Assembly (NCBI GenBank): GCA_025201805.1
Contig: MU619286.1
Location: 46,798-110,797, forward strand
DNA length: 64,000 bases
Direction of reading: 5' to 3'
Source: Parasitella parasitica NRRL 2501
Lineage: Eukaryota; Fungi; Mucoromycota
Shown here: positions 3,308 to 10,822 of the stretch, piece by piece
Layout: every line of letters begins with the position of its first letter
How positions within the stretch are numbered: the stretch's first letter is position 1
Notes under the pieces: model-generated
The model's input: the letters and a program-made list of their open reading frames with translations, nothing else
What the model was told of the DNA's origin: nothing
Databases searched by the model: none
Program-made: the position numbers and the translations under genes

Positions 3308-4771
3308 TGCACTGGCTATTTACCTGTTATAAACGTAGATAAAAGTTATACACTAATAAAGTAGTAGTGACATGTATCAAGAGAGCATTTGTGTATTCCT
3401 TCCATTTCGGGCTTACATGATCTCCAACAAAATAAAAGGTAATTTAGCTTGGAAAGCTCCTTCTTTTCTATCACTGCTTACAGTCCTTTAAGAAAGCTCC
3501 CATTTAAAGTTCTTTGAAGGTGCGTGTGTTGTCTTGTTTACTTGATTCATCCACAAATGTACCATATTTGATAGTTGTTTGCAACGCACCTTTATTCAAT
3601 GATGTATCCGTTTCGAATATCGAGTCATTAATGTGTGAAAAAGTTGTTCAAGGAAAATAGAATGGTACGGGGACAATATTGGTAAATGCTGGTATGATGC
3701 ATAAATTTAGTACTTGCAACCTTGATGTTCTGATCCAGAATTCAGCGTATAAATGCTTCTGATATAACATTCGGGCTACATCAACTCATTTTGCCCTTGT
3801 CTTGCGCCAAGAGCCTGCGTTGCTCTCTGTGCAAAATTTCTCGTTCTCTCACGGGGATGCAACAAGTAAGACTCTTCAATTCATCTTTCTACTGAATTCT
3901 TTACTCGCAGCATTGTCAAATTGACTTGAACATACTGCTGTATGACAGCTATTCTCATATGCTTCAAGCACTATTGTTTAGCAACAGTTGCAGACCCTGC
4001 AGCTTTAAAACACTTGATGCTTGACTAATACCGTATATATATTCACCACTACCAGGTGCTTTTTGTTGCTATCGATATTGTATATTTGTTGAAATCTCGA
4101 CGACATGGCTCCTTTTCAACGCTCAGCTCATGACTTTGCAAAGGGTTTGGTAACCATACTAATTGTGAGTCGATAGCAACCACAGAGTAAAGGAGATGCG
4201 CAAATGTTTATTTTACTGTATCACCTAGGTAGCAGCAAAGAAGAAAAAGGAGGGAATTCACAAAAAGCATGGATAGACAAAGAAGCCCCTTTTTTCGTAT
4301 AGACATGTTTTTGTGTTGTCTTTTTTGCATCAGATAATAATGCTATCGCATTGTATGTGTCTAGTGAAGAAGGAATGGCAGGTCCTGTTTGCTTTTGCAG
4401 CATGAATCTCGCAGGATATTCTCTATTTATGTGGCACAATGCGCTTTGTTGCCCATGAGAACTATTATGCATTTCTGTTGATGATTTCACTACACACTTG
4501 TCTGCTGCTGTTGCTGTGAGGGCGCAACACGCACACCTATTTATAAGTTTGCACAACCTGGTGCTACCACGTCAAAATCAAACAGACCAATTATCATGAA
4601 TGATATCTTGCATTTGTTCGCCCTTTCATAAGAAAACATTGCACACAAAACAAACCCCTCCCCTTTGACTCTCCCCCCCCCCCCTCATCACCCCACTGTT
4701 TGCTGATACTATAAAAAAGATATTCTTTCTCTTTGTTCAATCTCGAGGCTTTCTTCTCTGTATTCTCTTGA

Positions 4772-5500
4772 ATGTTAAAATCCATCATTTTACTTTCTTC
4801 GTTGGCCCTCGGCGCTGTTAATGCCCAAGTGCAATCTCCCACTTATCAGTACAATGTCACTTCCCCAAGCCCGAATTCTCCCTATGTTGCCAGCCAAATC
4901 CTTCCATGCATCTATGATATTGCAGACAATACAACAGCCGATAGTAAGTAGTCTTTTCAAAGATATGCGGCTAAACCTCATCGCAACTTGCAAATAGATC
5001 TCCAGCTCTCAATCTCATTAGTTGGCGCCAACATGTCTGCTCACCTGACTGCTTCTGCAGACATCTCGCAAGGATTCAGCTACCAAAAGCAGATTGGAGG
5101 CGCTACAGTGTATGAGCATCAATTTAACGTAAGTACCATGTATAGTGTAGCTCTGAGAACATGCTCCTGATAACTGCTTTTTTTGAATTAAAAAAAAAAA
5201 AAAAAAAAAAAATAGTACAACATTCCTCCCAACACAACGGCCGGTGCTTATCAAGTAGTCTTTCTCGATAATGTATCTCAAACAAACGTCAGCATTCCCA
5301 TTACAATTTCTGCTGCACCTGTAACTCCTACTTCGTCTGCTGCTGTTCCTTCTGGATCTTCTGGGACAACTGCAGCAACTACCTCTGTGCCTGCCAGCAT
5401 CTTTAACAAGGACAGCTCTTCCGCTGATCCTGCCATTCCACTCTCAAAATACCTGCTTGTAGCCTCTTTCTCAGTAATAGTTGCCTTTGTGCAATTTTAA
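4772..5500 (+). CDS. Secreted Ser/Thr-rich, probably GPI-anchored cell-surface protein, 3 exons
   Basis: Starts MLKSIILLSSLALGAVNAQ (signal peptide). GT-AG introns at ~4944-4997 and ~5129-5215. S/T/A-rich linker and a hydrophobic C-terminus (KYLLVASFSVIVAFVQF*). Not visible as one ORF in the track. Confidence 0.75.
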
Positions 5501-5764
5501 TCTTTTATATAATTGCCGTTTTTGCTAGTTTTTCTGGAGCAAAATCTAATCGTATCTTATACATAAAATAATTGTAGTGTTTTATAATAATCAAGTAAGC
5601 GGTGGGGCGAGTGTTTTGACTTTTTGCTGAATCAAGACTAATTTTACGAAAATAAGCAATAGAATAAATGGTTTATTAATTGTATGGTGCAATAGTAATA
5701 TATAAGATAGAAAAATGCTGTGATAATAGATGTTTACAATAGATACAAGAGTGTAATAAATAAC

Positions 5765-7821
5765 TTAAATTGCTGGTACTACAGCTCTGGGAGCTGCCTT
5801 TCTTGCGTTAGACAGGCGTGCAAAAGCACGAGAATAGATGGACACCATTTCAGAGAATGTAGCAGAGATAGCACGTGCTACTGGACCACGGAAGCCATAT
5901 ATACAGCGCAAGGCAATCCACTGTTGTTGATGTTTAGGCACTTTTGCACGCAAAGGGAACCCTGGAGCGTTGACAAGAGTAGGTCCAATGGCCATGTAGA
6001 TTTCAAAAGCAGCTCTGATGCTGCTTTGCACTTCTTCTGGCAAGCCGTCAATTCCCTTTTGAGCCTTATTTGAAATCTGGTCTGCAAGGCCCAAAATACG
6101 GATAGAAAAGGATTTGAGAGCATGCTCACCAACTAATAAAGGGTTCCTTGCGACTTTCAAGATGTGATACACATTTTGAGGCGGGTAGGGCATGTACTGA
6201 AGCGGAACGTAGCAACGGCCCACAAGGCTGTCAGCGATTACATCACGAGCAATATTGATCAATTGAAGACACTTTTAGAGCAAAAAGAAGCTTGTTTAGT
6301 ACATCAAAAAAATTATTCTGATTAGCTAATTTGTCTCTCACATACCTGCCCTGTCGCTCTGGCTCTTAATAGCACATGCTCATTCCGTACAGCGTTATTT
6401 TTTGGATTTCCCCAGTTGCCTCTGCCTGTTTTGTACATGATGGCGCAAGTGCACAGCTCACCGAACGTGCCAGAGATGAGAGCAGCATAGTTTAGCAGGT
6501 CTTTTTGCTTCTTGACAGGCTCTCCACGCAGATCATGTTCCCAAGCATCGGTAAGCTCGGACATGGCACGAGGACATAGGTAATGCGAGATGCGGGCAAA
6601 GTTTCTAAATATGGCCAGCACGTCTTGGTTTGGAAGAAGAGCATTGTAATAATCCCAGTTAATGTGTTCGGGTAGGGTCAAGTCCTGGTGGCTCTTGTAA
6701 CTGTTGATGGCCTGCTTAGGGTAAAAGACTTCTCGCAGAAACCTTCGAATAATGACCAAATTCTGCTCGCATTGCTTTCGCGTAGGGGCATCATCTACCA
6801 GGTCATCGGCGGTACGGAAGAATGCGTACAAAAGACAGAGATCTTGGCGCAAGTTGACAGGAAACAAGGCAGCCATGGTCTTCCAGGACCTGGAGGCAGG
6901 GCCCAAGACGCGGATTGCGGTTTCAAGGTCGTCAATAGGGGAAGCGTCAAGGTCAGCTTCATTTGGCATGCAAGAAATCAGACGAATGATGGCAATCCAG
7001 TAGGGTAAAGACAGCTGGTCTTGCAGGGCAGCTTGTTTTGACCTATCCTTCTGAACCAGGTGGGGAAATGTATTTAGAATGGTGTCGACATAGTCCAGGG
7101 CATTGCACGAAAGCACCAGAACAAGCACAAACAGGGCACAATCTAAAACGGTAGCTGCGTATAATTTACTGTGGGTATATGCTGTACGACAAACAAATGA
7201 GCCAAACAACGTTGAGATCACAGATGCTGCAGCGATCACTTTTGCCCTGCGAACAAAATAAGGGCCAGCAATGTACCACATTAGCCCAATGATAGTCAGT
7301 GCAAACGACGTTTGTGGCCGAGAAGCGTATTGGCTAATTGAAATAGTAATTAATTAAAAAGAATGAAATAAGGGGCGGATTCAGACTTACCTGGTGATGG
7401 CCATCAGAATAAGCGAAACAGACAGACCATGGCGAGCAAAACTAGACACAACAGCGCTTGAACGTGGGTTGATAAAGGTAATTGGGAACTGCCATCTTGT
7501 CAACAGGCCGCATAGAGACACGATAAAAGTAGTTAGCATAAGCAGAACAAGTGCATCCGAGAATAAAGGGGGGGCTGATAGACCAAATGCAGCAGCAGAG
7601 TTTAAATGTATTAAATCCAAGGCGGATGTCATGTTATTAGTGCTGTTATCGTAGAGGTTTGTTATTACTGCTGCTTTATTGTTGTAATCAATGACAAACG
7701 GGGCAAGAAATGCAGCGCCACCTAATGCACTGTATTTTGCTTTATCCAGCTTTGTTATAAAAGGTCGATATACGCAGAAGACGACCACAAGAGCAGCCAG
7801 AGTGTAATAAATATATGCCAT
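5765..7821 (-). CDS. Divergent CarRP/CarRA-like protein: degenerate lycopene-cyclase-like TM domain plus squalene/phytoene synthase domain, 3 exons
   Basis: Exons 7821-7391, 7333-6346, 6271-5765. N-terminus YYTLAALVVVFCVYRPFITKLDKAKY and LLTRWQF resemble CarRP cyclase repeat 1. LMWYIAGPYFVRR resembles repeat 2. Synthase motifs LRQDLCLLYAFFRTADDLVDD and LQLINIARDVIADSLVGRCYVP. Confidence 0.85.
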
Positions 7822-10689
7822 TGTGCGTTGTAGAAAGAAAAGAGAGAATATTTGATTGCAACTATCTCGCAAACCAGTATTTATACCAAATGGATCAGAA
7901 ACTATACCATCCCCTTTTCTCCCTTAAGATTACACAAGAGAAAATGGTTCGCTCTCTGTCTGTCTCTGTTGATGCCGTACAATGATTTACACATACATCT
8001 TGATCTTTTTTTTAATTTTTTATTTTTTTATTTATTTATTTTTCTATATGCAAGTGCCTCTCGATACGATTGTACACTGCAGCTACATGTATCTTTTTGC
8101 ATTTAAAAATCTCTGTAGACAAAAATGACAGGCACAGTTTCATATAAAACCCGCATCATTCATGTACAACTCTTCAAGTAAATATCTTTTTAGATGAAAC
8201 TGTTTGTTGTATTCGTCAATTGTACCACCCAGTTGTTAAACTTGTCGTTCTCTTTTAGAAGTATTGCGGCTCCTGCTTTTGAATTAATGCAGCCAAACGG
8301 CTACTAGATCAGAAGTAGGGGCGGTTCATCCTTCCGGTTTCTAGAGGCTTTATCAAGAATCCTTGTTGGTGCACAGTTTAAAAATAACCAGACCGAGAGA
8401 CAAGATGCGGACAACCGTACAAACAGGTTATAAGAATGCACCTTTGTTTGTGTAGTCTATTTTTTTTTTTTTTTTTTTTTTTTTTGCTCGGTATACGGTA
8501 GCAGACTAAATGTTCATGTCAAATCTGCAACTAATTCTCTATCATCTTGATCCTTATCATTGCCCTGAAGACGTTTTTATTTTCATATTATTTATTGTAT
8601 TTTAGTCTTTTAAACTCGTTGTCTGACTATAAGAGTCATCATGATAGTGTAAACAACAAAAACAAAAGATCGTTGGCAATCGATTGCATATAATGTCGTC
8701 AAATGACAAGTACTAGCAGGTCCGTATATACATATTGTACATCATGTACGCTGTCCCCTTGAATTGTACTAGAAACTTGTTACTATTCGGGTCATTCTTT
8801 TTACATGTCATGTAAGCCAAGTCAACGGGACCATCGAAAAGGTCAAAAAGAAAGGGGAAAAAGATGCGAAAACGCTTTCTCTATTTCTCGGCCACTTTTT
8901 ATACATCAACTCTTGTTATTAAACTTGTTTACGATGATATATATTATTGTTATTAACGAAATAACAAGTTTTTTTTTTTTTTTTTTGTTATAGTCGAGAG
9001 CCGTGTGTAATAACCAAGGGATATATTTACAGCTGGAATGTATCGATATAGCATAAGGTAGAAGGCTGATCAATACATGTATATTAAGACAGATGCGTTC
9101 TATATAGCACCATCCCGAATACTGCAAGATATTCTTGACATCTGAGGCAATGTGTTCTCTACCGATCATAACATTCAATATAATATGACGTTAATGTAAC
9201 TGAACTATAAACACGCATCTACACAAATAAACAAAAAACCGGTTTTTTTTAGACCATGTCCTGTATTGTACACATAAACAAAAGCACAACGAGATCAAGA
9301 GAGCCAACAAACACAACAACACCAAAAAAAAAACTGGGCTTTGTTGGCATGGGTGAACTGATAAACAGATCCGATGATGCCGCTTGTTCGGATGCCACAT
9401 GTGTGTAAACCTTGTTTTTGCGTTATAGTTTTTAATACAAATGTCAATTATCAAAAACAAATAGTAAAGGTCAGTGGCATCTACTGCACACTTCAAACCA
9501 TTGGAGTGCATTATGTGAAAATATGTGTACAGCATACCATACGCTGCATTGTTATTGTAGCAGCATTTGAAAATACATCGAAACCTAGAGTTACACACCT
9601 GAATATCATAATTTTTTCCGATTGCACCTTTTTGGTGGGAAGATTCACAGCAGTGCAAGTTTTTTTTTTTTTTTGTCTTCTGGATCAAATAAGTCAATTG
9701 AAAAATGTAACACTACAAAAATACGTGGGAAGCAATATTATATTTGCGCTTAGAACATGGATTTTGGAATGTTTGTCGTAGCACCGACCGCTTGCTTTTT
9801 TGTGCCTTTTTTTTGTTGTTGTTATTGTTGAGCAGTTGAGAGCATAGCACAATAACTGACTAAGCTACTAGTAATAAACTCATCATCTTCAATGATGTAT
9901 GTGCCAGAATCCTTATGCTTAAATGCACCAGAGAGAATCGGGCTATTATCTGTATTCTATATCATGAAGAGGTTTGCATCTATATCATGTATGGGTCGAG
10001 TGCCATATAAAAAAAAACTCTTTGTTTTTAAAGAGCCTATATCTTGTTACACCTACACAAAATACAAGTTTTCAACAGTTGCTTGAATAGATTTGTTTGC
10101 CTAAAATTTGAAAGACAATATTGAAGGCTGATGAGGAAAACGACTCTAGTCCCAAATGTTGCAAGCTTATTTCGACAATTTAGTATTGGCAACTTTAGCA
10201 GACGCTGCTGGAGGTACCTACAGAGTAAAGATCAGAAAGGAAAATCCAGACAAGAAAATTAGTCTTGAGATGTAATAGAGGCTTGCCTGGCGATAATTCA
10301 AATTCCACAAAGGAAAGGTGATATTGGCCAGGCTTGCCAAGAGCAGCCCAAACAAAAGGCGAGATTTACATCAAAATTATTGACTGCCAGAGTGTATGGC
10401 ATGTTGTGCAAACAAGTACACAGCGGCCTATGATATTGGGACATGCCTCCAAGGTTTTGTAAAAGCATACAACTAAAAGCGTGTCAAAAGTACCGCCTCT
10501 CGCTGTCATTGCGTGCAAAGGATGCCCACATTAGACACTTGATGTATAAGATCTCTAGATAGTCCGTGCAGCTTAGCTTGAGACCATCTGAATAGCATTT
10601 CAAGATTAGATATTATGACAGTTGATTTATTGCCAGTGAGTGTTATAAGCAGCGTCTCAGGGGTAACGCCTACCAAGTAGAATGCAGAG

Positions 10690-10706
10690 TACCGTATAGT
10701 ACGGTA
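10690..10706. promoter_or_regulatory. TACCGTA-tag-TACGGTA palindrome upstream of THO2
   Basis: Perfect 7-bp inverted repeat ~120 bp upstream of the THO2 ATG. The same heptamer occurs upstream of CWC22 and RFC2. Confidence 0.35.
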
Positions 10707-10822
10707 GCAGAATGTGGATTCTCGTGACTGTAAGCATAGTTTTTTTTTTTCACCTTCCTCTTGGCCCTCATCCCCTTTTCCCTTTTTTTTTGTTTTATCA
10801 ATCATAATAATAATAAAAAAGC

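What the first reader, a model, noticed from the sequence alone, without database searches (positions are those of the whole stretch)
5765..7821. Orphan CarRP-like paralog: cyclase catalytic motifs lost, prenyl-synthase active site kept, no carB partner
Seen: the protein has the two-part CarRP/CarRA layout. Where cyclase repeats 1 and 2 should carry the PLEE and PVEE motifs it reads GLSAPPLFSDALVLL and AYTHSKLYAATVLDC, with the second loop apparently deleted. The A(Q/M)AILH-type linker reads VDTILN. Both Mg/PPi-binding motifs of the synthase (DDLVDD, NIARDVIAD) and GRCYVP are intact. Pocket residues differ: SRSW for the usual SKSF, YAFFR for YxxCR, and SGTFG. About 3 kb upstream is gene-free. 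Established: Mucorales carRP/carRA sits head-to-head with carB, and the fungal/CrtYcd cyclases need the PxEE glutamates. Inference: this is not the carotene-pathway gene but a membrane-anchored head-to-head prenyl synthase with a repurposed cyclase domain. It may make an uncharacterised isoprenoid (phytoene for another fate, a C30 or other chain length, or a presqualene-type product) or act as a regulator or scaffold of the carotenogenic complex. This is the best candidate for an undescribed pathway in the window.
Basis: partly seen in the sequence, partly recalled or inferred. Interest (0 to 1): 0.85.

Follow-up and report, generated by a model that had tools for sequence, protein, structure and literature searches.

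The report
Cyclase-dead CarRP paralog, synthase intact
This mould gene is an expressed, anciently conserved second copy of the two-part beta-carotene enzyme CarRP. Its lycopene-cyclase half has decayed into a membrane anchor, while its phytoene-synthase half is kept under strong selection, so it probably makes phytoene or a close analogue for a purpose nobody has tested.

Summary
A three-exon gene on the minus strand (7821..5765) encodes a 641-aa CarRP-like protein. A spliced RNA contig matches both introns exactly. The genome (Parasitella parasitica) carries the canonical carRP head-to-head with carB on another contig, and no carB-like gene on this one.

The gene belongs to a well-supported clade found across Mucorales (Mucor, Rhizopus, Phycomyces, Lichtheimia, Absidia, Cunninghamella and others). 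All 23 members examined lack both cyclase PxEE motifs and carry a 16-residue deletion at the second. All keep every catalytic residue of the SQS/PSY synthase.

- **Selection:** dN/dS is 0.03-0.07 in the synthase domain and 0.2-0.4 in the N-terminal domain. It is not a decaying copy.
- **Pocket size:** the two positions that limit substrate size in CrtM are small and PSY-like here, so a C40 (phytoene-type) product is the most likely.
- **Mutant data:** published carRP/carRA null mutants are nearly albino, so any flux must be small or conditional.
- **Context:** no partner gene is conserved beside it.

A 2021 survey listed "carRA_1/carRA_2" groups without any analysis, and I found no functional study. 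I rate it a new variant of a known kind, of moderate interest, with product and role unknown. The scan's only other note on this gene repeats this finding.

The parts
7391..7821 (-). Exon 1 (ATG at 7821; aa 1-143 plus 2 nt of codon 144)
   Evidence: Sequence, joined translation, RNA contig piece 7391-7817. Orthologs P0184 and P0178 have the same 431-nt exon.
7334..7390 (-). Intron 1, 57 nt, GT..AG
   Evidence: RNA contig joint 7333/7391.
6346..7333 (-). Exon 2 (aa 144-473): second half of the N-terminal membrane domain, the linker and most of the synthase domain
   Evidence: Pfam SQS_PSY E 5.5e-16; RNA contig piece.
6272..6345 (-). Intron 2, 74 nt, GT..AG
   Evidence: RNA contig joint 6271/6346. 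This intron is absent in Rhizopus microsporus.
5765..6271 (-). Exon 3 (aa 474-641 plus TAA stop)
   Evidence: Pfam SQS_PSY E 7.1e-10. The RNA contig runs on to 5718, giving a 3' UTR of at least 47 nt.
7069..7821 (-). N-terminal membrane domain (aa 1-232), a degenerate homolog of the CarRP R (cyclase) domain
   Evidence: hhalign against the canonical R-domain profile: probability 99.4%, E 1e-21. Six hydrophobic 19-mers. Seven helices in the AF2 model of ortholog P0184. dN/dS 0.21-0.37.
7543..7572 (-). Site of the lost first cyclase motif (PPLFSDALVL, aa 84-93). Only D89 is conserved, at the place of the second Glu.
   Evidence: Alignment blocks and diagnostic columns.
7138..7182 (-). Site of the lost second cyclase motif (AYTHSKLYAATVLDC, aa 195-209), with a 16-column deletion relative to canonical CarRP
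   Evidence: Alignment block.
5891..6912 (-). SQS/PSY-type head-to-head prenyl-diphosphate synthase domain (aa 285-600, interrupted by intron 2)
   Evidence: Pfam; PDB profile hits to CrtM, PSY and SQS; Foldseek TM 0.80-0.83 to CrtM; dN/dS 0.03-0.07.
6790..6807 (-). First Asp-rich motif DDLVDD (aa 320-325)
   Evidence: D320 and D324 are invariant in 52 sequences. They align to CrtM D48 and D52.
6230..6256 (-). Second Asp-rich motif NIARDVIAD (aa 479-487)
   Evidence: N479, R482, D483 and D487 are invariant. They align to CrtM N168, R171, D172 and D176.
7822..10822 (.). About 3 kb of upstream intergenic region, shared divergently with THO2. It contains non-coding islands conserved with Mucor fragilis at 8187-8293, 8824-8984 and 9153-9259.
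   Evidence: ORF list; blastn against L012 and L013; Pfam Tho2.

Best explanation
The gene is a transcribed member of an ancient Mucorales-wide sister clade of CarRP/CarRA.

**N-terminal half.** The cyclase (R) domain has lost both catalytic PxEE motifs. It survives as a loosely constrained multi-helix membrane platform. In CarRP-type enzymes the synthase half depends on this platform.

**C-terminal half.** The SQS/PSY-type domain keeps every diphosphate- and Mg-binding and catalytic residue and is under very strong purifying selection. I therefore read the protein as an active, membrane-anchored, head-to-head prenyl-diphosphate synthase with no cyclase activity.

**Product.** Because the residues at the two known size-limiting positions are small, as in phytoene synthases, the most likely reaction is 2 GGPP to prephytoene-PP to phytoene, or a close analogue. 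The gene is transcribed on its own from a long private promoter rather than from the carB-carRP bidirectional promoter. It would contribute a small or condition-specific pool.

**Shown:** gene structure, expression, clade conservation, motif loss, residue retention and selection.
**Inferred:** catalytic activity (about 0.75), C40 product (about 0.45) and low or conditional flux.
For: - **Expression.** A spliced RNA contig matches the model.
- **Canonical pair elsewhere.** carRP and carB lie on contig C41.
- **Distinct clade.** The representative search gives 15 hits at E below 1e-36 (37-93% identity), then drops sharply to canonical CarRPs at 104 bits or less. Named orthologs occur in more than 25 Mucorales genera. 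In the tree the 23 paralogs form one clade with SH-aLRT 100 and broadly follow family groupings.
- **Motif loss.** All canonical and outgroup sequences keep VPxEE and LPxEE. All 23 paralogs lack both. TIGR03462 hits the canonical controls and not the paralogs.
- **Homology of the N-terminal domain.** It is still homologous to the R domain (hhalign 99.4%).
- **Catalytic residues.** Invariant across 52 sequences: R306, Y313, R317, D320, D324, D411, Y426, Q476, N479, R482, D483, D487, Y494, Y565 and R581. Among them, Y426, Q476 and N479 align to CrtM Y129, Q165 and N168, and R317, R482 and R581 to the diphosphate anchors R45, R171 and R265. Their roles are described in PMC13304436.
- **Selection.** Against the second Parasitella genome, synthase dN/dS is 0.068, compared with 0.205 for the canonical P domain. 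The N-terminal domain gives 0.37, compared with 0.097 for the canonical R domain.
- **Column conservation.** Columns at least 90% conserved: synthase 125 against 115; N-terminal 13 against 121.
- **Structure.** The AF2 model of ortholog P0184 has pLDDT 90.8 and pTM 0.88. Its closest solved structures are CrtM-type synthases.
- **Pocket size.** CrtM F26 and F233 align to A298 and L550.
- **Mutant data consistent with a minor cyclase-less phytoene synthase.** A Phycomyces carRA nonsense mutant lacking the PS domain still made a little lycopene (PMC3139582). M. circinelloides delta-carRP retains 2.5 against 209 ug/g carotenoid (PMC11048425).
Against: - No enzyme assay exists for any member of the clade.
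- Five clade-wide pocket substitutions to bulkier residues could change substrate or product: F to W294, A to M297, C to F316, V to F434, and C to F562 in the AAC to AAF motif.
- carRP/carRA null mutants are essentially albino. If the paralog makes phytoene, it does so at about 1% or less of pathway flux under laboratory conditions.
- The residual pigments in those mutants were attributed by their authors to other causes and were never linked to this gene.
- The mapping onto CrtM residues rests on a profile alignment at about 18% identity.
- I could not inspect model coordinates, so no pocket geometry was measured.
- Expression evidence comes from a single run kept as contigs. It gives neither expression level nor growth condition.
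Confidence: 0.6

Rival explanations
1. It is an active synthase that makes something other than phytoene. Candidates are a C30 dehydrosqualene-type product from FPP, a mixed or longer condensation product, or only the cyclopropyl diphosphate intermediate (HpnD-like). This would start an undescribed isoprenoid branch.
For: - Clade-specific invariant substitutions cluster in sequence motifs that line the CrtM/PSY pocket: SKSF to SRSW, TAS to TMA, FCR to FFR, SSVGE to GTFGE, and AAC to AAF.
- The clade has a long stem branch of 1.39.
- The synthase is more constrained than the canonical P domain, which suggests a distinct, selected function.
- There is no carB neighbour in any species.
- The HpnD model scores nearly as high as the CrtB models.
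Against: - Residues at the two experimentally defined size gates (CrtM F26 and F233) are small and the same type as in canonical CarRP.
- NCBIfam ranks the families in much the same order as for canonical CarRP, with CrtB and HpnD well above HpnC and SQS.
- The genome already has a normal squalene synthase.
- No product data exist.
Confidence: 0.25
2. It is a non-catalytic pseudoenzyme that regulates or scaffolds the carotenogenic complex, for example by pairing with CarRP or CarB in the membrane.
For: - Genetics in Phycomyces and Neurospora point to interactions between the R and P halves and to enzyme complexes (PMC3139582).
- Albino carRP nulls show that the paralog cannot replace CarRP.
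Against: - Every catalytic and Mg/PPi-binding residue is invariant across the clade over a very deep divergence.
- Synthase dN/dS is 0.03-0.07. Pseudoenzymes normally lose such residues.
- No interaction test was run.
Confidence: 0.1
3. It is still a bifunctional cyclase/synthase that uses different catalytic residues, for example the conserved D89.
For: One acidic residue, D89, is conserved at the position of the second Glu of motif 1. The domain fold is retained.
Against: - Both PxEE motifs are invariant in every canonical, chytrid, basidiomycete and insect homolog, and absent in all 23 paralogs.
- Motif 2 is deleted outright.
- Only 13 conserved columns remain.
- TIGR03462 finds nothing.
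Confidence: 0.03
4. It is a decaying duplicate or an annotation artefact.
For: None beyond the loss of the cyclase motifs.
Against: It has an intact ORF, a correctly spliced transcript, retention across Mucorales and dN/dS well below 1 in every domain.
Confidence: 0.01

Closest known systems
CarRP (Mucor) / CarRA (Phycomyces, Blakeslea): bifunctional lycopene cyclase / phytoene synthase
   Same: - Same two-domain layout and length.
- End-to-end homology (28% identity, E 4e-65).
- The N-terminal domain is homologous to the R domain.
- Same SQS_PSY domain with identical catalytic residues.
- Both copies are present in the same genomes.
   Different: - Both PxEE cyclase motifs are lost and 16 residues are deleted at motif 2.
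- A variable low-complexity loop replaces the conserved WDNYIV region.
- It is not clustered with carB.
- It carries diagnostic pocket substitutions.
- The selection pattern is reversed: tight on the synthase, loose on the N-terminal domain.
- It keeps the ancestral NT(F/Y)P linker that canonical Mucorales CarRP has lost but Umbelopsis and Jimgerdemannia retain.
Bacterial CrtB / plant PSY (15-cis-phytoene synthase)
   Same: - These are the best NCBIfam matches.
- Asp-rich motifs are present.
- Small residues sit at the CrtM F26 and F233 positions.
   Different: - Scores are far below the equivalog cut-offs (84 against 500 bits).
- The protein is fused to a roughly 230-aa membrane domain.
- The pocket residues W294, M297, F316 and F434 differ.
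CrtM / dehydrosqualene synthase and CrtM-like enzymes (PDB 2ZCO, 3AE0, 8IS6)
   Same: These are the closest solved structures (TM 0.80-0.83). The catalytic residues are shared.
   Different: About 18% identity. The bulky F26 and F233 size gates of CrtM are absent here.
"carRA_2" group of Koczyk et al. 2021 (PMC8070225)
   Same: It is a second grouping of carRA homologs across Mucoromycotina, found by antiSMASH and clustering and attributed to ancient genome duplication. It probably contains this clade.
   Different: That paper treats both groups as bifunctional enzymes. It gives no motif, selection, expression or functional analysis. I could not verify that carRA_2 is the same set as this clade.

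Membership tests
SQS/PSY head-to-head prenyl-diphosphate synthases (Pfam PF00494) | Domain match above the curated cut-off | tested here: met
   Exon 2 scores 59.5 bits and exon 3 scores 39.5 bits against a cut-off of 26. Ortholog P0184 scores 119 bits.
SQS/PSY head-to-head prenyl-diphosphate synthases (Pfam PF00494) | Two Asp-rich Mg/PPi motifs plus the catalytic Tyr, Gln, Asn and Arg residues | tested here: met
   DDLVDD and NIARDVIAD are present. Y426, Q476, N479, R317, R482 and R581 are invariant and align to CrtM Y129, Q165, N168, R45, R171 and R265.
SQS/PSY head-to-head prenyl-diphosphate synthases (Pfam PF00494) | All-helical class I isoprenoid synthase fold | tested here: met
   The AF2 model of ortholog P0184 (84% identical) gives Foldseek TM 0.80-0.83 to CrtM and CrtM-like structures.
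SQS/PSY head-to-head prenyl-diphosphate synthases (Pfam PF00494) | Condensation activity on prenyl diphosphates | not testable with these tools
   This needs an enzyme or complementation assay.
[quoted passage not shown] | N-terminal membrane domain homologous to CrtYc/CrtYd fused to a PSY domain | tested here: met
   End-to-end alignment; hhalign 99.4%; placement inside the Mucoromycotina CarRP radiation.
[quoted passage not shown] | Two PxE(E/D) cyclase motifs, one per repeat | tested here: not met
   Both are absent in the window protein and in all 23 clade members. Both are present in all 33 other sequences.
[quoted passage not shown] | Match to the lycopene-cyclase domain model TIGR03462 | tested here: not met
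   No hit at E of 1 or below for P0184 and P0154, nor for the window's exons. Controls P0215 and P0168 score 122-123 bits.
[quoted passage not shown] | Divergent head-to-head clustering with carB (Mucorales) | tested here: not met
   There is no amino-oxidase gene on contig C50 or beside orthologs in six other genomes. The canonical pair is on C41.
15-cis-phytoene synthase (CrtB/PSY equivalogs) | Score above the equivalog cut-off, or demonstrated GGPP to phytoene activity | tested here: not met
   NF045921 scores 83.7 bits against a cut-off of 500. The canonical CarRP control also fails at 143.7 bits, so this test is uninformative for fungal enzymes. Activity cannot be tested here.
15-cis-phytoene synthase (CrtB/PSY equivalogs) | Small residues at the substrate-size gates (CrtM F26 and F233 positions) | tested here: met
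   A298 and L550, by profile alignment. The role of these determinants is taken from PMC13304436.

The most novel reading that the evidence does not exclude
The clade is the entry enzyme of a second, carB-independent isoprenoid branch conserved throughout Mucorales. Its reshaped pocket (W294, M297, F316, F434, F562) would yield a product other than pathway phytoene, or would feed a separate, developmentally restricted pool such as sexual or spore-wall apocarotenoid or sporopollenin precursors. It would also explain the long-unexplained residual lycopene in Phycomyces carRA nonsense mutants.
Probability: 0.22. Interest if true: 0.8.

Novelty: new variant of a known kind. Interest (0 to 1): 0.55.

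Why it matters
Mucor, Phycomyces and Blakeslea are the classical genetic and industrial models of fungal beta-carotene synthesis. The pathway is taught as two structural genes, carB and carRP/carRA. This work shows a conserved, expressed third gene in most Mucorales examined. It has an intact phytoene-synthase-type active site and a dead cyclase.

- It offers a concrete candidate for residual pigment in "null" mutants.
- It is a possible hidden sink or source of GGPP-derived products in production strains.
- It is a natural experiment showing that the R domain is kept as a membrane platform after its chemistry is lost.
- It is directly testable in M. lusitanicus (MUCCIDRAFT_110939) with existing knockout and E. 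coli complementation tools.

Tried and rejected
- **Pfam PF18916 (Lycopene_cyc).** It found nothing in the whole genome. It is uninformative, because it barely detects even canonical fungal CarRPs (E 0.26 for Mucor, 6e-4 for Umbelopsis). TIGR03462 was used instead, with controls.
- **Single-sequence phmmer of exon 2 against the PDB.** No hits. A profile was needed.
- **ESM Atlas search with the N-terminal 240 residues of P0184.** No usable hit.
- **Timing of the duplication relative to the Umbelopsis split.** Unresolved. The free tree joins paralogs with canonical Mucorales at support 23. The alternative, canonical plus Umbelopsis, is not rejected (p-AU 0.64).
- **Conserved partner gene.** None found. 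Neighbours differ between families, apart from traces of synteny: a 195-aa gene, GNAT, RsmB and MoeA in Mucoraceae, and eEF1A and ADK in Phycomyces, Lichtheimia and Absidia.
- **Literature.** No paper mentions CarRP-like, carRP2/carRA2 as a gene, the accession numbers or locus tags of the Phycomyces, Lichtheimia, Absidia or Mucor orthologs, or the GenBank name "TerpE". Only PMC8070225 mentions carRA_1/carRA_2 groups.
- **Pocket geometry.** It could not be measured because model coordinates are not exposed to scripts.
- **Complex prediction.** Not run, because I do not claim binding to CarRP or CarB.
- **Joined protein.** The joined 641-aa translation was never sent to a search or folding tool. 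Exons were searched separately by reference, and full-length steps used the database ortholog P0184.
Full report
**Gene model and expression**

On the minus strand an ATG at 7821 opens a three-exon gene: 7821..7391, 7333..6346 and 6271..5765. The introns are 57 and 74 nt, both GT..AG. The product is 641 aa.

One public run kept as contigs holds a 1972-nt contig at 100% identity. It covers 5718-7817 and skips exactly 6272-6345 and 7334-7390. A precisely intron-less contig can only come from mRNA, so the gene is transcribed and the model is right.

The orthologs in a second Parasitella assembly and in Mucor fragilis have exon 2 of the same length (988 nt). The Parasitella ortholog matches all three exon lengths. 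Rhizopus microsporus lacks intron 2.

The deposited model for this very gene (P0188, 547 aa) equals residues 95-641, so it is truncated at the N-terminus.

On method: the joined protein was built only inside local scripts from window.fa. It was never typed or sent to a search or folding tool. Searches used the exons by reference. Full-length searches and the fold used the database ortholog P0184, which is 641 aa and 84% identical.

**The observation**

The protein aligns end to end with the genome's own canonical CarRP at 28% identity and E 4e-65. Pfam SQS_PSY covers aa 290-588.

The canonical carRP (612 aa, with PLEE and PVEE intact) lies on contig C41, head-to-head with carB. The other two SQS_PSY loci are squalene synthase on C113 and a fourth, uncharacterised locus on C97.

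Canonical exon 2 is 100% identical to a Parasitella parasitica protein, which identifies the organism.

**A conserved second clade**

An exhaustive HMMER search with exon 2 gives 15 representatives at E below 1e-36, with 37-93% identity. It then drops sharply to canonical CarRPs at 104 bits or less.

Named members come from Rhizopus, Mucor, Parasitella, Benjaminiella, Cokeromyces, Choanephora, Blakeslea, Gilbertella, Helicostylum, Pilobolus, Mycotypha, Radiomyces, Sporodiniella, Phycomyces, Apophysomyces, Circinella, Fennellomyces, Lichtheimia, Absidia, Halteromyces, Cunninghamella, Hesseltinella and Gongronella.

A maximum-likelihood tree of 56 full-length proteins puts the 23 paralogs in one clade (SH-aLRT 100, stem length 1.39). 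Its internal order broadly follows family groupings. It stands beside the canonical Mucorales clade (support 100) and Umbelopsis, with Jimgerdemannia and then chytrid, basidiomycete and insect homologs outside.

Whether the duplication came before or after the Umbelopsis split is unresolved. No Umbelopsis member of the clade was found. Phycomyces, Absidia and Apophysomyces have two copies each.

**What was lost**

Every canonical and outgroup sequence keeps VP[LIVY]EE and LP[LVIF]EE. Every paralog lacks both:
- At motif 1 only a single Asp (D89) survives, at the place of the second Glu.
- At motif 2 there is a 16-column deletion.
- The conserved WDNYIV region is replaced by a variable low-complexity loop, which has low pLDDT in the model.

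TIGR03462 scores 122-123 bits on canonical CarRP and Umbelopsis controls but finds nothing in two paralogs.

The domain is nevertheless a true homolog of the R domain (hhalign 99.4%, E 1e-21). It keeps at least six hydrophobic spans, and the model shows seven helices.

Only 13 columns are at least 90% conserved within the clade, against 121 in canonical R domains.

**What was kept**

Invariant across all 52 aligned proteins are R306, Y313, R317, D320, D324, D411, Y426, G472, L475, Q476, N479, R482, D483, D487, Y494, P496, P551, A561, Y565, I568 and R581.

By profile alignment to CrtM, these include the equivalents of R45, D48, D52, Y129, Q165, N168, R171, D172, D176, Y248 and R265. PMC13304436 describes Y129, Q165 and N168 as implicated in catalysis and Mg coordination, and R45, R171 and R265 as the diphosphate anchors.

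The synthase domain has 125 columns at least 90% conserved in the clade, against 115 in canonical P domains.

The AF2 model of P0184 is confident as a whole (pLDDT 90.8, pTM 0.88). Its closest solved folds are CrtM-like enzymes and CrtM (TM 0.80-0.83).

**Selection (Nei-Gojobori dN/dS)**

| Comparison | N-terminal / R domain | Synthase / P domain |
|---|---|---|
| Window paralog vs second Parasitella genome | 0.37 | 0.068 |
| Window paralog vs Mucor fragilis | 0.22 | 0.034 |
| Canonical carRP, same Parasitella genome pair | 0.097 | 0.205 |

In the first comparison the linker gives 0.074. So the synthase half of the paralog is more constrained than that of the pathway enzyme. The ex-cyclase half is relaxed but still under purifying selection. 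This refutes a decaying duplicate and argues against a pseudoenzyme.

**Clues to the product**

Clade-diagnostic substitutions, at least 90% within the clade against at least 80% elsewhere, are: E to D89, L to F112, F to W294, A to M297, C to F316, G to A407, Y to W408, A to S431, S to G432, V to F434, M to T471, V to I564 and Y to F578. Several lie in motifs that line the CrtM/PSY pocket.

On the other hand, the two experimentally defined size gates of CrtM, F26 and F233 (PMC13304436), align to A298 and L550. These are the small, PSY-type residues also found in canonical CarRP. NCBIfam ranks CrtB and HpnD models well above HpnC and SQS, much as it does for canonical CarRP.

I therefore favour a GGPP-using, phytoene-type reaction. 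I keep a sizeable probability for an altered product.

**Fit with published genetics**

M. circinelloides delta-carRP retains 2.47 against 209 ug/g carotenoid (PMC11048425). The paralog therefore cannot carry bulk flux.

PMC3139582 recalls that a Phycomyces carRA mutant with a stop in the cyclase domain, and hence no PS domain, still accumulated minor lycopene. This was then ascribed to squalene synthase. In Neurospora, where I found no second copy, the residual pigment was C30 diapolycopene.

A cyclase-less phytoene synthase paralog, which Phycomyces has in two copies, would give exactly lycopene in that mutant. This is my inference. No one has tested it.

**Genomic context**

No desaturase or other conserved enzyme gene lies beside the paralog in Parasitella, Mucor, Rhizopus, Lichtheimia, Phycomyces or Absidia.

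The gene has an unusually long private upstream region. It is 3.0 kb here, up to the divergent THO2 gene, and 1.9-5.2 kb in the six other loci examined. It contains islands conserved with Mucor at a divergence where synonymous sites are saturated.

**Prior knowledge**

Databases call these proteins "Squalene/phytoene synthase-domain-containing", "CarRP-like isoform 1", "Phytoene synthase/Lycopene cyclase" or "TerpE". Koczyk et al. 2021 list carRA_1 and carRA_2 groups from an antiSMASH survey and ascribe them to genome duplication. Other comparative papers count a single carRA.

I found no functional, motif-level or evolutionary description. The held library lacks most subscription journals, so an unseen report cannot be excluded.

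**Verdict**

This is a new variant of a known kind: a cyclase-dead but synthase-intact CarRP paralog conserved across Mucorales. Product and role are unknown.

Noticed in passing
window 5765-7821 (protein P0188): The public protein model for this gene (547 aa, Parasitella parasitica) starts at Met95 of the 641-aa product supported by RNA and orthologs. The deposited annotation lacks the first 94 residues.
   Followed up: yes
window 7822-10822; L012, L013, L015, L016, L017, L018 upstream of 10001: The paralog has a long upstream intergenic region in seven genomes (1.9-5.2 kb). Against Mucor fragilis, non-coding islands at window 8187-8293, 8824-8984 and 9153-9259 stay 72-81% identical although synonymous sites are saturated. 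They may be regulatory elements or an unannotated small RNA or gene.
   Followed up: partly
L001:944-1014 and L014:5005-5057: Intron 1 of the canonical carRP appears to use a GC-AG splice site (donor GCAAGT), conserved in both Parasitella assemblies. The public model P0213 instead starts at an ATG overlapping the end of exon 1 and reads through the intron. There is no RNA evidence for this locus.
   Followed up: partly
window vs L012/L014 (GCA_000938895.1): The two assemblies labelled Parasitella parasitica differ by about 16% in protein sequence and have dS of 0.5-0.6 at both carRP loci. Synteny also breaks about 1.9 kb upstream of the paralog. They look like different species rather than strains.
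   Followed up: no
L012:1-559: In the other Parasitella assembly an HMG-CoA reductase gene lies about 9.5 kb upstream of the paralog. This is not so in the window, where THO2 is the upstream neighbour.
   Followed up: no
protein P0301 (AIT18227.1): The Mucor circinelloides ortholog was deposited in GenBank under the name "TerpE", so someone cloned it as one of a series of terpenoid genes. No paper was found in the held library.
   Followed up: partly
protein P0276: A full CarRP-type protein with both PxEE motifs intact is annotated in the fungus gnat Pseudolycoriella hygida, on a 64-Mb contig. In the tree it falls with the non-Mucoromycotina sequences used as outgroup. It may be a fungus-to-insect carotenoid gene transfer.
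   Followed up: no
G000:C97:24789-25642 (L004, L005): This is the fourth SQS_PSY-family locus of the genome, with multiple exons. It may be the NDUFAF6-type complex I assembly factor. It was not characterised.
   Followed up: no
window 4560-5583: A small multi-exon gene (195 aa in relatives, no Pfam family) lies tail-to-tail with the paralog. It is syntenic in Parasitella and Mucor. A contig of higher word depth ends at 5555.
   Followed up: no
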